A stretch of 64,000 bases of DNA. Origin: Octopus sinensis (lineage: Eukaryota). The stretch's first letter is position 1. Each line of letters opens with the position of its first letter. A model generated the notes under the pieces. The model made no database searches and was not told the origin of the DNA. It saw only the letters and a program-made list of their open reading frames with translations. A program made the translations under genes and the position numbers. Shown in pieces: positions 20,204 through 27,893 of the stretch. The stretch covers positions 25,791,360-25,855,359 of the forward strand of contig NC_043019.1 of the NCBI RefSeq assembly GCF_006345805.1. The letters run 5' to 3'.

Positions 20204-20303
20204 NNNNNNNNNNNNNNNNNNNNNNNNNNNNNNNNNNNNNNNNNNNNNNNNNNNNNNNNNNNNNNNNNNNNNNNNNNNNNNNNNNNNNNNNNNNNNNNNN
20301 NNN
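20204..20303. other. Assembly gap (100 N)
   Basis: Run of n; contiguity across it is not guaranteed. Confidence 1.
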
Positions 20304-21547: not shown

Positions 21548-22620
21548 TGTATGTGCGTGTGGTGGGGGAGAGAATATTTCGGAAAAATATATAATTCTTG
21601 CCCGTTGTTGCTGTCATTTTTGCTCTTGTCAAACCCGTTGTCTCTTATTTTTCCCTCACATTTTCTCTCGAAAAATTAGTTATTTTCGTTGTTTTTGCTT
21701 TCTTTTTTCTTTTTTGTCATTTATTTCTCGTGAGTACGTTAACATTTTTTTTTGTTTGTTTTTCTACATTATTTTTTTAATGTTGTTGCTTTGATTTCTT
21801 CTTTTGGGAGACGGAGATATTATTTTTTGCCTAAAGTTCAAGTTAAATCAAATGACAATATTTTTTTTTTCTTAAATACAACCTTCTTGCCTAATTCCTG
21901 TAAATGGTAGACATTTCAAAATTTTCAATAACAACATTTGCCAGAAAAAATATCCAAATTGATTTTTTTTTTTTTTTTTTCCTGATCAAACGTAAAAAAA
22001 CATTGAACATGCTCAGAGCAAAATTTTACTTAGTCTGAGCAACGACAACACCAGCCGAAAATAATAATCATTTCTTTATTCTGACAGCAATTTCGTGGTA
22101 GGAGATTACAATAATTCCAGGAAGAACGAAAGGTAAAGTCGACTTCGACGGAATTTGAACTCAGAACGTAAAGACGAATGAAATGCTGTGAATCATTTAG
22201 CCCAGCGTGCTAACGATTCTGCCAGTTGGCCATAATAATGACAATAATGATAATAATGATAGTTATTATCAGCTATTTATATTTCCTACAGACAATAATA
22301 ACAATAACAATATCTATATAAATATTCACTTCTGAATATTTTACTCCTTATATATATAATATTTTTTTTTACTCTCTCCATTTTTTTTTACCTCTCATCC
22401 CTTCCGTAGACTCGAAACATCAAAGACTTTCCATTCTTCCCGAGCGTCAAACTAATACACCTGCTTGTTGTTCATACACTTGTCTTCGTCTCTTGGTTTC
22501 TGTTCATTTGAAATATATGTGTGTATGTGTGTATGTGTGTGTGTGTGTATAGTACATACATATGGGTGAGTGTATATATGTGTGTGTGCGTATGTGTGTA
22601 TGAGCGCGTGTGTGTGTATA

Positions 22621-23017
22621 CTCTTTACTCTCTTTTACGTGTTTCAGTCATTTGACTGCGGCCATGCTGGAGCACCGCCTTTAGTCGAGCAAATCGACCC
22701 CGGAACTTATTCTTTGTAAGCCCCGTACTTATTCTATCGGTCTCCTTTGCCGAACCGCTAAGTGACGGGGACTTAAACACACCAGCATCGGTTGTCATGC
22801 AATGCTAGGGGGACAAACACACACACACACACATATATATATATACATATATACGACAGGCTTATTTCAGTTTCCGTCTACCAAATCCACTCACAAGGCA
22901 TTGGTCGGCCCGGGGCTATAGCAGAAGACACTTGCCCAAGATGCCACGCAGTGGGACTAAACCCGGAACCATGTGGTTGGTTAGCAAGCTACTTACCACA
23001 CAGCCACTCCTACGCCT
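22621..23017 (-). mobile_element. SINE family A, full length
   Basis: Reverse complement of the 33833 and 57085 copies, with an internal CA/TA tract. Confidence 0.9.
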
Positions 23018-23375: not shown

Positions 23376-23428
23376 GTCGATTGCAATTTCTCATACATAT
23401 ATAAGGGTGTGTGTGTGAGAGAGAGAAA

Positions 23429-23493
<65 letters not shown>

Positions 23494-23503
23494 TGTGTGT
23501 GTG

Positions 23504-23534
<31 letters not shown>

Positions 23535-24507
23535 CCTCGAAATCGGATGAATGATGCGACTGATAGGTCAGATTCAGTGAAATTGGGAATCGGAAACCTA
23601 AAGAGGAACATTATAACCAAATAATTGAATTGAAATTTATACAACGAACAGGAAACAGTTAAACGAATTGCTACGCATAATCCACCTGATACACGACTCA
23701 AAATGAGAAATGAGGCAGAACACGTGATCCACGATACATGATGTTCGAGATCTCGTTGCTGCTTGCTTTTTTTTGTTTTGCATTTTTGTTGTTGTTTGTT
23801 TGTGTTTTTTTTTTTCATTTTTTTCTCTTTTTGTGTTATTACGCCGCCCCTCCACTCTTGATCATTCGGAATAATGGAAATACTGTCTTATTTCGCACGG
23901 AGATTTCAATCCTTAATCTTCTAATCCCATAATAGCGAAGGAGCTGAAGAGTATCATAAAAGAGTCCAGTGTTTGAACACGTTGGCACTGTCTACGGTTC
24001 CAACCAGACAGCTGATCATAAAATACAAGCTCTAGGATTGAAATGGGATTAATCCAAATCCTGCCTCTAAATCCAAAAGATTACCAGTCACATTAGCTTT
24101 TGATTCCTAATACCTTCCCCTCATTCTCTCTCTCACTCACAGTTTTTCTCTCAATCTATATCTATATCTCTCACTCTCTCCTTCTTTCCCTCTGCCTTTC
24201 TATCTCTCTATCTTTTTTCTATTTATCTATCTTACTTTTCCTTAATTTTTCTATCAATATCACTTTTTCTTTTCTGTTTGAATAATAATAATAATAATAC
24301 TCTCTCTCTCTCTTTATCTCTCTCTCTCTCTCCTCTCTCTCTCTCTTGCCGTCCATGTCTACGGATTTCCTTTTATCACTTCAAGCCCTCATGCTCTTCT
24401 ACTTGGCTACACAAGCAAACTTGTGAATACAATACGCTTTCACACAGATACTTATTGATAAACATGCAGATGCAGATACACAAACACACACATTACAGTG
24501 TATTATA

Positions 24508-24559
<52 letters not shown>

Positions 24560-24567
<8 letters not shown>

Positions 24568-25137
24568 ATAGAGGGCATTATTACACATAAATGCCACACG
24601 CTAGGAGGGACTTTCAAAGTCATTACTACCAAAATTAAACGATCGTACCGAATACAGCTCTCGAAGCAAGACATTTAAAAAACAGAATTTAGTTCCAGAT
24701 CACTTGTGATTTCGCAATTAACGTATTATCTACGTCTTTTGTTCATCAGTGAAACATATTCAGAACATATCAAAAATAAACAAAACCAACATACCTAGCG
24801 GAACCAAACAGACAACTGTCGCCTCCATCGTAGCACATGGAAATGTTCATTCATCATATATTCATGTAAATGGCGGGCTTTTTCGAACTGCATTTCGGTG
24901 AGAAACGTGCTTCTTCGGAACAAATTAAATAATTAAGGATAAAATCGTAAAAAAAAATCTTAACAAGAAATCATCAGGTAGTTAGCGTGAAAAACCTCAT
25001 AAGAGAAAAAATCTGAAAATTTTTTTCACTTGAAAATATTTGTTTATATTGTATAGAGGGCATTATTACACATAAATGCCACACGCTAGGAGGGACTTTC
25101 AAAGTCATTACTACCAAAATTAAACGAATCGTACCGA

Positions 25138-25142
<5 letters not shown>
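24560..25142 (-). mobile_element. Putative non-LTR retrozyme (485-bp monomer plus ~97-bp terminal redundancy, hammerhead inside)
   Basis: Direct repeats 24560-24656 and 25045-25142 are identical except one inserted A; non-coding interior with a type I hammerhead; (TA)n on both sides. Confidence 0.75.
24685..24761 (-). ncRNA. Type I hammerhead ribozyme (single A10.1-C11.1 mismatch)
   Basis: Minus strand GAAU-AU-GUUUCA-CUGAUGA-ACAA-AA-GACGUA(GAUAA)UACGUU-AA-UUGC-GAA-AUCA(CAAG)UGAU-C^UGGAAC-UAA-AUUC; all three stems pair; predicted cleavage after AUC, between 24698 and 24697. Confidence 0.85.
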
Positions 25143-25179
<37 letters not shown>

Positions 25180-26597: not shown

Positions 26598-26997
26598 GGA
26601 GTAGCTTGCCTACCAACAACATCGTTCCGGGTTCATTCCCGCTGCATGGCACCTTGGGCAAGTGTGTCTAACTATAACCACGGGTCGACCAAAGCCATGT
26701 GAGTGGATTTGGTAGACAGAAACTGAAAGAAGCCCGTTGTATATATGTGTACATATATATATGTATGTGTGTGTATATATGTGTGTCTGTGTTTGTCCCT
26801 CGCGATCCCCAACATCGCTTGACAAGCGATGCTGGTGTGTTTACGTCCCTGTAACTTAGCGGTTCGGCAAAAGAGACCGATAGAATAATTACTAGGCTTA
26901 CAAAGAATAAGTCCTAGGACCAATTTGCTCGACTAAAGGCGGTGCTCCAGTAAGGCCGCAGTCAAATGACTGAAATAGGTAAAAGAGTAAAAGAGTA
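26598..26997 (+). mobile_element. SINE family A
   Basis: Same body and AAAGAGTAAAAGAGT tail as the other copies. Confidence 0.88.
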
Positions 26998-27893
26998 ATA
27001 TATATATACACACACAGACGTACAAACATACATATATGTACATATATATATACATATATATTTATATATATATATATGTATATCTGTATGTAGTACGTAT
27101 CTTGAATGTATGTATTTATGTATGTATCGATAATGTTTAAGATACTAGCGCGCTTTTAATTCGCTATAGAATATATGCATGTATATGTGTGTGTGTGTCT
27201 GAGTCTGTATGCTTATAAATGTATATTTGATTAAATATATATATAATGTGTGTGTCTGTGTGTGTGTGTGCATGCGTGCGACAAGATATATAGATGATAG
27301 TCATCTACTGCTAACATTTTTGAAATCTTTCTTTATATAAAGAACAACCAAATTTAAGTAGGATCATGACAACACGTAACTCAACACAAATCATCGCTGA
27401 CATAGAGTGATGTGCCTCGACAACATGAAACCATAGGTAACAGATTCATAGTTGTAAATTAGTTGAATGTATATTTGTGAGTGTATATATATATATATAT
27501 ATATATATGTAATAGATAGATAGACATAACGTTTATGTTATTAAAACTGCGTGACATAGAAACAATTAACACTGAGGCGAATCAAAATTGTGCACGCCGT
27601 TAATGGCTTATATTAATGCATAAAGAGGATGCATACAAGTGTGTGTGTGCGTGCATGTGTATGTGTGTATATATGTGTATGTGTGTGCGTGTAACCTTGC
27701 GTACGTTTGTCGAGTATGTCAGACAAAGAGAGAGGGAGAAAGAAAGGGAAGAGAGGGAGAGAGAATTGAAAGAAAGAGAGAGAGAAAGAAGGTTAATAGT
27801 TTATGAGATTACAAAGATTAAAGATAATTTGATAGATGAAAATGTTTCAGAATCGAAATGTCATATTTTTTTAGTGTACAACAGATATGTATG

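What the first reader, a model, noticed from the sequence alone, without database searches (positions are those of the whole stretch)
24685..24761. Near-canonical type I hammerhead ribozyme in non-coding DNA (minus strand)
Seen: the minus strand reads CUGAUGA (24749-24743), then stem II, then GAAA (24713-24710), helix III AUCA(CAAG)UGAU and an AUC cleavage triplet (cut between 24698 and 24697). Stem II has a CAA/UUG base, an AA/AA internal loop, GACGUA/UACGUU and a GAUAA loop. Stem I pairs GUUUCA with UGGAAC (6 bp, one G-U) and extends past a UA/UAA internal loop into GAAU/AUUC. Established: this is the type I hammerhead topology, in which loop 2 contacts a stem I bulge. The only deviation is A instead of G at 10.1 (24742), giving an A-C mismatch with 11.1. 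Inference: this is a copy of an active ribozyme family carrying one transition that may weaken it.
Basis: partly seen in the sequence, partly recalled or inferred. Interest (0 to 1): 0.9.

Follow-up and report, generated by a model that had tools for sequence, protein, structure and literature searches.

The report
Hammerhead ribozyme in a retroelement repeat
The motif is a real type I hammerhead ribozyme carried by a small non-coding retroelement that is scattered through this 2.7-Gb animal genome; its one odd base (A at position 10.1) is the normal state of most of the family, not damage to this copy.

Summary

It lies in a roughly 485-nt non-coding repeat. The window holds 1.2 units (25141-24561) between two (TA)n tracts. 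Copies have variable 5' ends, partial tandems and head-to-head inverted partners. That is the anatomy of Penelope-like elements (PLEs) and non-LTR retrozymes.

A10.1 is not private to this copy:
- All 48 exact copies of this subfamily have it.
- Across the family, positions 10.1/11.1 read A.C in at least 82 copies, U.U in 42 and canonical G-C in 19.

Between subfamilies the catalytic core never changes. Three base pairs, two in helix I and one in helix II, are swapped by changes on both sides. The other differences fall on N7, H17 and the loops. One helix I swap lies between two A.C-bearing subfamilies, so the fold was kept by selection while A.C was in place.

Rfam finds no hammerhead here, but it also misses the canonical sister copies, so that test says nothing.

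Verdict: a genuine hammerhead lineage with a naturally non-canonical 10.1/11.1 pair. Self-cleavage is untested. It is a new variant of a known kind, of moderate interest.

The parts
25143..25178 (.). (TA)n microsatellite at the 5' side of the insertion (5' in the sense of the minus-strand element)
   Evidence: Read directly. Other copies also abut (TA)n at their 5' ends.
25046..25141 (-). Module a, first copy. This upstream partial unit is about 96 nt, runs from GTATTCGGTACG... to ...CTCTATACAATAT, and makes the copy 1.2 units long.
   Evidence: Direct repeat with 24551-24642 at 97% identity and 485-nt spacing (D8).
24922..25045 (-). Module b (boundaries approximate). It ends at the family's second alternative 3' end (...TTATCCTTAATT...). 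Modules a+b alone form a much more abundant short relative that has no hammerhead.
   Evidence: A 21-nt word of module b occurs at 1831 sites, against about 90 for words of the hammerhead. Alignment A7. Two 163-nt copies in L100, each set in (TA)n.
24656..24921 (-). Module H (boundaries approximate): the roughly 265-nt segment that carries the hammerhead
   Evidence: Alignments A3 and A5. A word from module H occurs at 170 sites.
24685..24761 (-). Type I hammerhead motif, 77 nt, comprising the helix I extension, helix I, the core, helix II and helix III
   Evidence: Alignments A6, A8 and A10.
24743..24749 (-). Core C3-A9 (CUGAUGA). N7 = U at 24745.
   Evidence: Invariant apart from N7, which takes all four bases across subfamilies.
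24742..24742 (-). A10.1, opposite C11.1 (24714): a non-canonical A.C where the consensus has G-C
   Evidence: 48 of 48 copies of this subfamily have A. Family-wide the states are A.C in at least 82 copies, U.U in 42 and G-C in 19.
24714..24741 (-). Helix II with C11.1 (24714). From the core outward it has 3 bp (CAA/UUG), an AA/AA internal loop, 6 bp (GACGUA/UACGUU) and loop 2 (GAUAA).
   Evidence: The 10.4-11.4 pair swaps A-U to U-A in lineage C. In that lineage the distal part is replaced by 3 bp and a GNRA loop.
24710..24713 (-). G12 A13 A14 A15.1 (GAAA)
   Evidence: 11.1 is C in 89 of 91 sites and G12 is kept in 88.
24699..24710 (-). Helix III: 4 bp (AUCA/UGAU, including A15.1-U16.1) closed by loop CAAG
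   Evidence: The loop varies (CAGG in about 75 copies, CAAG in 12, CAUG in 1, and 3 nt in lineage C) while the stem does not.
24697..24698 (-). Predicted cleavage site: C17 (24698), then the cut, then U1.1 (24697)
   Evidence: The position follows from the hammerhead consensus. H17 is C, A or U in relatives and never G. 5' ends of copies are about 2.5-3 times enriched at 0 to +10 nt.
24561..24655 (-). Module a, second copy, ending at the family's first alternative 3' end (...CTCTATACAATAT)
   Evidence: The same 3' end is followed by (AT)n in most copies.
24509..24560 (.). (AT)n microsatellite at the 3' side of the insertion

Best explanation
The window holds one dispersed copy (25141-24561, minus strand) of a roughly 485-nt non-coding, AT-rich retroelement. 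The element carries a genuine type I hammerhead ribozyme on its sense strand.

Shown:
- The family has at least 140 hammerhead-bearing copies in at least five subfamilies (A, B1, B2, C, D).
- Copies lie in (TA)n tracts. They have two alternative fixed 3' ends and variable 5' ends. Some exceed one unit, and many carry a head-to-head inverted partial partner.
- Between subfamilies the hammerhead core is invariant, helices I and II are kept by compensatory changes, and variation is confined to N7, H17, the loops and the 10.1/11.1 pair.

Inferred:
- The element is a non-autonomous passenger of the genome's abundant Penelope-like elements (PLEs), in other words a retrozyme-like element.
- Its transcript, read from tandem or circularised copies, is cut after C17 by the hammerhead.
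- cDNA synthesis is primed where A/U-rich stretches of the RNA meet a nicked (TA)n target.
- The A10.1.C11.1 pair of the window's subfamily is a tolerated, probably slower, natural variant and not a lethal lesion. The reason is that helix I went on being repaired by selection in lineages that carried A.C.

The window copy itself is one intact-looking member of its subfamily, with a single ribozyme. It shows no sign of a host function.

Repeat family:
- The 121-nt piece around the motif has 42 scored matches at 93-100% identity in a 2.72-Gb genome.
- Exhaustive pattern counts: 86 sites for the 5' half, 91 for the 3' half, 42 for lineage C, and at least 15 D copies.

Element anatomy:
- The window copy is 1.2 units between (TA)n tracts.
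- 3' ends are fixed and 5' ends variable, and some copies exceed one unit.
- Head-to-head inverted pairs are common.
- The same traits, including a (TA)n insertion bias, are described for PLEs (PMC8557442).
- Hammerheads in PLE repeats are described in PMC4209133, and non-LTR retrozymes in PMC7229834 and bioRxiv 10.64898/2026.07.22.740005.
- The genome holds thousands of GIY-YIG (PLE endonuclease) candidates, some inside long open frames, and canonical PLE-type hammerheads.

Selection on the fold:
- Three pairs change on both sides (2.1-1.1, 2.2-1.2, 10.4-11.4), and one wobble becomes Watson-Crick.
- Helix I is 100% paired in all lineages.
- Slid-partner controls give 0-1 such pairs.
- 0 of 500 shuffles reach the covariation score.
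- In lineage C the distal helix II is rebuilt as 3 bp plus a GUAA or GCAA tetraloop.
- N7 takes all four bases, and H17 is C, A or U.

A.C is old and widespread:
- It is the state in subfamilies A, B2 and D.
- The 2.2-1.2 swap lies between A and D, both of which carry A.C.

Precedent:
- Natural active hammerheads with a U10.1-U11.1 mismatch are known (PMC3088659).
- An axolotl retrozyme hammerhead has a U.U mismatch at the base of helix II (PMC7229834).

5' ends of copies:
- Break points are 2.5-3 times enriched at 0 to +10 nt from the predicted cut.
- Two copies start exactly at U1.1.
Against: - No cleavage assay or RNA data exist, so activity of any variant, A.C above all, is inferred.
- G10.1-C11.1 is the most conserved hammerhead pair after A15.1-U16.1 (PMC3088659, PMC4209133). 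It forms part of the A9/G10.1 metal site (my knowledge), so A.C may cost a great deal of rate.
- The hammerhead fold is 2-3.5 kcal/mol above the predicted MFE in both the A and B1 forms.
- No Rfam hammerhead match.
- Copies with two hammerheads one unit apart, which would be needed to release a monomer, were not seen among the 86 sites. The retrozyme/circular-RNA step therefore has no direct genomic support.
- The short relative without a hammerhead (modules a+b) is about 20 times more abundant. This means the ribozyme is not needed for copying, or simply reflects 5' truncation.
- No autonomous partner sharing the element's ends was found.
- The covariation rests on few lineages (about 2-3 branches).
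- The enrichment of 5' ends could equally be reverse transcriptase stalling at the folded ribozyme, and the events are not all independent.
Confidence: 0.7

Rival explanations
1. Dead relic. The hammerhead was functional only in the canonical (G10.1-C11.1) form. On this view the A.C copies, the window's included, are inactive passengers that kept being copied because the copying machinery does not need the ribozyme.
For: - G10.1-C11.1 is very strongly conserved in hammerheads (PMC3088659, PMC4209133).
- Short relatives without a hammerhead are about 20 times more numerous.
- PLE clades without hammerheads proliferate well (PMC8557442).
- Subfamilies A and B1 have similar divergence from their own consensus (3.0% and 3.95%), so both spread at about the same time whatever their ribozyme state.
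Against: - A.C is shared by three subfamilies (A, B2, D).
- A compensatory C-G to U-A swap plus a change from U.G to C-G in helix I separates A from D. That is hard to explain without selection on the fold while A.C was present.
- The core is invariant in the consensus of every A.C subfamily.
Confidence: 0.2
2. Editing-gated ribozyme. On this view A10.1, which sits opposite C in a helix, is deaminated to inosine by ADAR. That yields an I-C pair equivalent to G-C, so cleavage would depend on RNA editing.
For: - An A opposite C inside a duplex is a favoured ADAR context (my knowledge).
- Many copies sit in head-to-head inverted pairs that would form long duplex RNA.
- The assembly statistics match, from my memory only, an octopus genome, and coleoid cephalopods edit RNA very heavily (my knowledge, unverified here).
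Against: - No RNA data at all.
- Helix II is short (3+6 bp) for an ADAR substrate.
- The U.U lineage shows that the family tolerates a non-canonical pair without any editing route to G-C.
- The identity of the organism is not established.
Confidence: 0.05
3. Chance resemblance. On this view an AT-rich repeat happens to contain CUGAUGA and GAAA with pairable flanks, and there was never a ribozyme.
For: - No Rfam hammerhead hit.
- The hammerhead fold is not the MFE, and the MFE z-score is only -0.59.
- A 2.7-Gb genome is expected to hold some tens of relaxed chance matches (extrapolated).
Against: - About 0.001 relaxed matches per shuffled window, and 0 strict matches in 2000 shuffles.
- Sister subfamily B1 is fully canonical.
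- There are compensatory changes in two helices, a GNRA-for-GNRA loop change, and free variation only at N7 and H17.
- The motif is on the sense strand of a PLE-like element, where hammerheads are expected (PMC4209133).
- Rfam also misses the canonical copies.
Confidence: 0.03

Closest known systems
Hammerhead ribozymes of Penelope-like elements (PLE pseudo-LTR hammerheads; Cervera and de la Pena 2014, PMC4209133; Craig et al. 2021, PMC8557442)
   Same: - A type I hammerhead on the sense strand of a retroelement.
- Partial tandem copies, with a head-to-head inverted 5'-truncated partner.
- Insertion into microsatellites, here (TA)n as reported for Naiad PLEs.
- The same genome is full of GIY-YIG-bearing PLE copies.
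   Different: - No ORF: the unit is about 485 nt and non-coding.
- The ribozyme is not the minimal, dimer-dependent PLE type with a 1-2 bp helix III, which this genome also has. It has a stable 4-bp helix III and a long, interrupted helix II.
- 10.1/11.1 is mostly A.C or U.U, whereas the PLE paper lists G10.1-C11.1 as highly conserved.
- No autonomous partner with shared ends was found.
Metazoan non-LTR retrozymes (Cervera and de la Pena 2020, PMC7229834; Li, Clavereau and Pollet 2026 preprint, 10.64898/2026.07.22.740005)
   Same: - A small, AT-rich (34% GC), non-coding repeat with a type I hammerhead.
- A unit that behaves as circularly continuous: b runs into H, and H runs into a.
- Proposed dependence on PLE machinery.
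- A mollusc precedent in mussels, if the host is indeed a cephalopod.
   Different: - Retrozymes are defined by tandem arrays in which each unit has a hammerhead, so that monomers are released and circularised.
- Here copies are dispersed, at most about 1.5 units long, and almost always hold one hammerhead. No pair at unit spacing was found among 86 sites.
- The 485-nt unit is at or above the upper end of the reported 150-450 nt.
- The predicted circular fold is only 59% paired, z = -1.9.
Natural hammerheads with a mismatched 10.1/11.1 pair (U10.1-U11.1 variants, Perreault et al. 2011, PMC3088659; axolotl HHR_Amex2 with U.U at the base of helix II, PMC7229834)
   Same: - The core is otherwise canonical and the first pair of helix II is non-canonical.
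- Lineage C of this family has exactly U.U.
   Different: - The window's form is A.C. I found no description of it as the standing state of a natural family. This rests on a limited literature search.
- PMC3088659 states that U.U supports more activity than any other mismatch, so A.C is expected to be worse.
Schistosoma Sm-alpha and other SINE-like or satellite carriers of type I hammerheads (newt satellite 2, cave-cricket pDo500; PMC2837043)
   Same: - A short, dispersed or repeated non-coding DNA that carries a type I hammerhead.
- Compensatory changes among copies, including at 10.1/11.1 in crickets.
   Different: - No tRNA-like head.
- Not a satellite array.
- Helix III is stable, so dimer formation should not be required.

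Membership tests
Hammerhead ribozyme, type I | Conserved core: C3 U4 G5 A6 N7 G8 A9, G12 A13 A14, A15.1-U16.1, and H17 not G | tested here: met
   All are present in the window copy. They are also present in the consensus of every subfamily.
Hammerhead ribozyme, type I | G10.1-C11.1 as the first pair of helix II | tested here: not met
   The window copy and its subfamily have A.C. The pair is present in sister subfamily B1, 19 copies. Lineage C has U.U. Natural exceptions with U.U are accepted members of the class (PMC3088659).
Hammerhead ribozyme, type I | Three helices around the core, with helix I open and helices II and III closed by loops | tested here: met
   By sequence the helices have 6+4 bp, 3+6 bp and 4 bp. 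The fold is not the thermodynamic optimum predicted without tertiary terms.
Hammerhead ribozyme, type I | Helices supported by covariation among relatives | tested here: met
   Within the young subfamily the result is not significant: 91 of 500 shuffles reach the score. Between subfamilies, 3 pairs change on both sides and 1 wobble changes, and 0 of 500 shuffles reach the score. Only a few independent branches are involved, and helix III never varies.
Hammerhead ribozyme, type I | Match to a curated covariance model (Rfam RF00163 and related) | tested here: not met
   No hit at the gathering threshold or at E<=10. The canonical B1 loci also give no hit, so the failure reflects the long helix II and not the A.C pair.
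Hammerhead ribozyme, type I | Tertiary contact between loop 2 (or a helix II internal loop) and the helix I internal loop | not testable with these tools
   Internal loops lie 6 bp up helix I and 4 bp up helix II, which is the canonical geometry (PMC4209133). Whether they make contact is inference only.
Hammerhead ribozyme, type I | Site-specific self-cleavage after H17 | not testable with these tools
   There is only indirect evidence: an enrichment of copy 5' ends at 0 to +10 nt from the predicted cut.
Non-LTR retrozyme | Tandem repeats in which successive units each carry a hammerhead, so that a monomer can be excised | tested here: not met
   Among 86 sites, no two on one strand lie one unit (about 485 nt) apart. 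The same-strand spacings seen are 86 and 315 nt and 1262 nt. Copies are at most about 1.5 units long.
Non-LTR retrozyme | Expression as small circular RNA | not testable with these tools
   No RNA data. The unit is circularly continuous in DNA copies.
Non-autonomous derivative of a Penelope-like element | Partial tandem (pseudo-LTR) structure with inverted 5'-truncated partners | tested here: met
   The window copy reads a-b-H-a. There are many head-to-head pairs.
Non-autonomous derivative of a Penelope-like element | Microsatellite target bias | tested here: met
   (TA)n is found at both ends of the window copy and at most junctions examined.
Non-autonomous derivative of a Penelope-like element | An autonomous RT/GIY-YIG element in the same genome that shares its termini | tested here: inconclusive
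   PLE endonuclease candidates are abundant (4846 at first look). None of the 20 fetched loci holds the element's 3' 20-mer, and the one 3' flank I read is unrelated. That is a very small sample.

The most novel reading that the evidence does not exclude
The A10.1.C11.1 hammerhead is a conditional ribozyme. In a host with very heavy A-to-I editing, deamination of A10.1 opposite C would create an I-C pair equivalent to G-C. That would switch self-cleavage on, so RNA editing would control processing of a retroelement transcript. A milder form of the idea is that a protonated A+.C wobble makes the ribozyme pH-dependent.
Probability: 0.05. Interest if true: 0.85.

Novelty: new variant of a known kind. 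Interest (0 to 1): 0.45.

Why it matters
Hammerheads in animal retroelements are common, so a further family is not news in itself. Three things make this one useful.

1. It is a natural allelic series inside one genome. The same scaffold carries G-C, A.C or U.U at the most conserved helix pair, the rest of the ribozyme is held constant, and the stems were repaired by compensation. That gives a ready-made test of how much the 10.1/11.1 pair really matters in an extended natural hammerhead.

2. It bears on the open question of whether PLE and retrozyme hammerheads are needed for mobility at all. Here ribozyme-bearing copies and ribozyme-less versions of one element coexist at very different copy numbers.

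3. It shows that curated covariance models miss hammerheads with a long, interrupted helix II. Similar families may therefore be under-counted.

Tried and rejected
- **Rfam.** I ran it at the gathering threshold and at E<=10 on 64 kb, 451 nt and 91 nt. There was no hammerhead hit, only weak chance hits to C/D snoRNA and CRISPR-repeat models. I rejected the snoRNA reading because there is no D box. Canonical sister loci are also missed.
- **MFE folding.** It does not recover the hammerhead. This is not decisive, because tertiary and core interactions are not modelled.
- **My own covariance model (R1).** It could not be run on the genome because the tool refuses it.
- **Metagenome scan for the motif.** Nothing found.
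- **tRNA-derived SINE head.** None found.
- **Coding capacity nearby.** No Pfam domain in the window's ten longest frames.
- **Autonomous partner.** I searched by GIY-YIG and found none.
- **Direction of the change between G and A.** Subfamily consensus sequences form a chain B1-B2-A. Ages are similar. A midpoint-rooted tree nests G10.1 among A10.1 copies, but support is weak. The direction stays undecided.
- **Special conservation of the hammerhead relative to its flanks, at consensus level.** I did not see it: 5 differences in 77 nt, against 3 in 123 nt downstream and 12 in 99 nt upstream. What matters is where the changes fall, not how many there are.
- **Rod-like circular fold of the unit.** Only a weak signal, z = -1.9. 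My unit was 4 nt short at the junction.
- **My early reading of a 'fixed single 3' end'.** I had to correct this. There are two alternative 3' ends.
- **Organism.** The assembly size, contig count and a 105.89-Mb scaffold match what I remember of an Octopus sinensis assembly. A literature search did not confirm this, so I treat it as unverified.
Full report

Yes. Read on the minus strand, the window shows at the coordinates given:
- helix I: GUUUCA (24755-24750) with UGGAAC (24697-24692)
- the core CUGAUGA (24749-24743)
- A at 10.1 (24742) opposite C at 11.1 (24714)
- helix II: CAA/UUG, an AA/AA internal loop, GACGUA/UACGUU and loop GAUAA
- GAAA (24713-24710)
- helix III: a 4-bp stem with loop CAAG
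- C17 at 24698
- a 4-bp extension of helix I beyond a 2x3 internal loop.

A descriptor I wrote requires CUGANGA, at least 3 bp of helix II beyond 10.1/11.1, GAAA, at least 3 bp of helix III, UH and at least 5 bp of helix I. It finds exactly this site in the 64 kb when 10.1/11.1 is left free, and nothing when G-C is demanded. Of 2000 dinucleotide-preserving shuffles of the window, two had a relaxed match and none a strict one. So the motif is far beyond chance for one window. A 2.7-Gb genome would still hold some tens of relaxed chance matches.

**2. Tests that came out negative, and what they are worth**

- Rfam gives no hammerhead hit at the gathering threshold, or at E<=10 on 451 or 91 nt.
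- The minimum-energy fold is not the hammerhead. A competitor pairs UCACU (helix I 5' strand plus C3 and U4) with AGUGA (helix III 3' strand). The energies are -12.5 against -10.3 kcal/mol.

Neither result is decisive. Rfam also returns nothing for three loci that hold the fully canonical sister form. The cause is therefore the architecture, a long interrupted helix II set against a 45-position model, and not the A.C pair. Nearest-neighbour energies also ignore the core and the loop-loop contacts.

**3. What the motif sits in**

The window belongs to a 2.72-Gb assembly of 13,516 contigs, so the host is a eukaryote. The 121 nt around the motif recur at 93-100% identity on many chromosomes.

The window copy runs from 25141 to 24561 and lies between two (TA)n tracts. 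It is 1.2 units of a roughly 485-nt sequence, because its first 96 nt repeat its last 95 nt (D8). I call the parts:
- a: about 95 nt
- b: about 120 nt
- H: about 265 nt, holding the hammerhead.

The copy reads a-b-H-a.

In 15 copies aligned with 600-nt flanks, and in 19 more chosen only by the 3' 119 nt, several things hold:
- The 3' end is fixed, most often ...CTCTATAYAATAT followed by (AT)n.
- The 5' end differs from copy to copy and usually abuts a microsatellite.
- Some copies run through the 3' end into b, and others end at a second site about 125 nt further on.

Many copies have a head-to-head inverted partial partner.

Module counts differ sharply:
- b: a 21-nt word occurs at 1831 sites
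- H: a word occurs at 170 sites
- either half of the hammerhead: about 90 sites.

Randomly chosen b sites are short a-b elements without H, each set in (TA)n.

Other facts about the element and the genome:
- The element has no tRNA-like part.
- The window's long frames have no Pfam domain.
- The genome holds thousands of GIY-YIG candidates, some in frames of about 780-880 codons.
- It also holds canonical minimal PLE-type hammerheads.

Partial tandems, inverted 5'-truncated partners and a (TA)n insertion bias are the published hallmarks of Penelope-like elements (PMC8557442). Their repeats carry type I hammerheads (PMC4209133). Animal retrozymes are now argued to be their non-autonomous derivatives (PMC7229834; bioRxiv 10.64898/2026.07.22.740005).

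I did not find the autonomous partner. None of the 20 fetched GIY-YIG loci holds the element's 3' 20-mer.

**4. The A at 10.1**

It is not private to this copy.
- All 48 exact copies of the 23-mer around it have A, and none has G in that context.
- An exhaustive search with N at N7, at 10.1 and in the helix II loop gave 86 sites. 67 have A10.1 and 19 have G10.1.
- The G10.1 copies (subfamily B1) sit in the same unit. Their hammerhead is canonical throughout: CUGAAGA, G...C, GAAA.
- Position 11.1 is C in 89 of 91 sites. There is no A-U lineage.

Two further lineages turned up:
- **C**, 42 sites, all with U10.1.U11.1. Helix I is GUUCUG/CAGAAC. Helix II begins CAU/AUG and ends in 3 bp closed by GUAA or GCAA. 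Loop 3 has 3 nt, and H17 = A.
- **D**, at least 15 copies, with A.C. Helix I is GUUCUA/UAGAAC, loop 2 is UUUAA, and H17 = A.

So the family reads A.C in at least 82 copies, U.U in 42 and G-C in 19.

**5. Is the fold under selection?**

Within the young subfamily there is too little variation to tell. There is one double change, and 91 of 500 shuffles do as well.

Between subfamilies the picture is clear.
- The core never changes.
- Pair 2.1-1.1 is A-U or G-C.
- Pair 2.2-1.2 is C-G or U-A.
- Pair 10.4-11.4 is A-U or U-A.
- Pair 2.3-1.3 is U.G or C-G.
- Helix I is 100% paired in every lineage.
- Sliding the partners by 1-3 columns gives 0-1 double changes.
- No shuffle out of 500 reaches the observed covariation score.

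The remaining differences fall on N7 (all four bases), on H17 (C, A, U, never G), on the loops (including one GNRA-for-GNRA change), on the internal loops and on 10.1/11.1.

The 2.2-1.2 swap separates A from D, and both carry A.C. So helix I was being kept paired while 10.1/11.1 was A.C. This holds wherever the root of the family lies.

That matters because the direction of change cannot be settled:
- The consensus sequences form a chain B1-B2-A.
- Divergence from each subfamily's own consensus is similar: 3.0% for A and 3.95% for B1.
- A tree of the flanks nests G10.1 among A10.1 copies only under a midpoint root and with weak support.

A caveat: the independent branches are few, and helix III never varies.

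**6. Indirect sign of cleavage in vivo**

I took all 94 copies that hold an exact 22-nt word lying 18 nt 3' of the predicted cut and read 70 nt upstream.
- Fifty continue through the ribozyme.
- Among the rest, break points occur at 0.44 per nt between -44 and -4, at 1.4 per nt between -3 and +3, and at 1.3 per nt between +4 and +10.
- Two copies begin exactly at U1.1 after (TA)n.
- In several head-to-head pairs the longer arm stops 2-3 nt short of the cut.

After removing duplicated loci and counting each inverted pair once, the enrichment is about 2.5-fold (roughly p = 0.01). This is what cDNA run-off on a self-cleaved RNA would give. A reverse transcriptase stalling at the foot of the folded ribozyme would look much the same, so I count it as suggestive only.

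**7. Most likely mechanism**

Shown: a hammerhead lineage maintained by selection, on the sense strand of a non-coding element that is copied into (TA)n tracts by a 5'-truncating, tandem- and inversion-forming process.

Inferred:
- The copying machinery is that of the genome's Penelope-like elements.
- The template behaves as a tandem or circular RNA, because b runs into H and H into a in all lineages.
- cDNA starts where one of two A/U-rich stretches of the RNA can pair with a nicked (TA)n target.
- The hammerhead cuts the transcript after C17.
- A.C at 10.1/11.1 lowers activity but does not abolish it.

Precedents:
- Natural hammerheads that begin helix II with U.U are active (PMC3088659).
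- An axolotl retrozyme hammerhead has U.U at the base of helix II (PMC7229834).
- The same source says U.U is the best of the mismatches, so A.C should be slower.

The internal loops lie 6 bp up helix I and 4 bp up helix II. That is the canonical spacing for the tertiary contact (PMC4209133). This is inference.

**8. Points against the retrozyme step**

- Almost every copy has one hammerhead.
- No two of the 86 sites lie one unit apart on one strand.
- The predicted circular fold is only modestly stable.
- The a-b form without a hammerhead far outnumbers the rest.

That last point may be plain 5' truncation from the second 3' end. It may instead mean that the ribozyme is dispensable for copying, as suggested for hammerhead-less PLE clades (PMC8557442).

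**9. Comparison and verdict**

It works like a PLE or retrozyme hammerhead. As a hammerhead it meets every defining sequence feature except G10.1-C11.1, which is met by a sister subfamily. It fails the tandem-array criterion of non-LTR retrozymes. It meets the structural criteria of a PLE derivative, but no partner has been identified.

It is a new variant of a known kind. What is new is a natural G-C / A.C / U.U series at the most conserved helix pair of one otherwise constant ribozyme, together with evidence that the fold was kept while the pair was A.C.

The most novel reading the evidence does not exclude is control by A-to-I editing of A10.1. I give it about 5%.

No full-length consensus of any element was built, and no copy is singled out as active.

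Noticed in passing
G000 genome-wide; examples L094-L098 and L100:888-1050 and 1279-1441: A short element of about 160-250 nt, made of modules a+b of the unit and lacking the hammerhead, is far more abundant than the hammerhead-bearing form. A 21-nt word of b occurs at 1831 sites, against about 90 for the hammerhead. Each copy is set in (TA)n.
   Followed up: partly
G000, e.g. L021:1501-1545, L026 and L027 (431 nt apart on C16): The genome also holds canonical minimal type I hammerheads of the PLE kind (CUGAAGAG-ACCC...GGGU-CGAAAC, helix III of 2 bp). Matches to RF00163 reach 48 bits, and there were 265,664 first-look candidates. This is a different family from the one in the window.
   Followed up: partly
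G000, (L073-L092): There are thousands of GIY-YIG endonuclease candidates (4846 at first look, 147 scored below E 0.001), many identical in score and some inside open frames of about 780-880 codons. This indicates a large and partly young Penelope-like element population.
   Followed up: partly
L009, L012, L014 and L017 flanks (alignment A3, columns about 200-400 and 1240-1400): A second, unrelated repeat lies next to several copies. It begins GGCTGTGTGGTAAG..., contains GGTTCAGTCCCACTGCGTG, and ends in (TA)n or (TATG)n. It looks like a tRNA-related SINE whose tail may supply the (TA)n target.
   Followed up: no
window 22553-22993 and 26600-27064: Two adjoining inverted-repeat pairs (258 nt at 78% and 175 nt at 85%) bracket the region about 3.6-4 kb apart. 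They look like two oppositely oriented copies of some other repeat.
   Followed up: no
window 20204-20303: A run of 100 N, which is an assembly gap.
   Followed up: no
window 24752-24748 with 24704-24700 (minus strand): UCACU (the end of helix I plus C3 and U4) can pair with AGUGA (the end of loop 3 plus the helix III 3' strand). This gives a fold 2-3.5 kcal/mol more stable than the hammerhead in both the A and B1 forms. It may be an inactive alternative conformer.
   Followed up: partly
L051:330-500 (C2:148670329-148670499), duplicated 695 nt away: A head-to-head inverted pair of copies. The long arm stops 2 nt short of the predicted hammerhead cut, and the short arm starts 13 nt further in, with a 7-nt filler between them. 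The whole structure is present twice, 695 nt apart.
   Followed up: partly
L059:404-497: A long, near-perfect hairpin of about 90 nt lies in the flank of a B1 copy. It gives weak chance-level hits to plant microRNA precursor models in Rfam.
   Followed up: no
window 23392-23550: Long compound (GT)n/(GA)n microsatellites. The whole window is rich in (TA)n, (CA)n and (GT)n tracts and shows no recognisable coding sequence.
   Followed up: no
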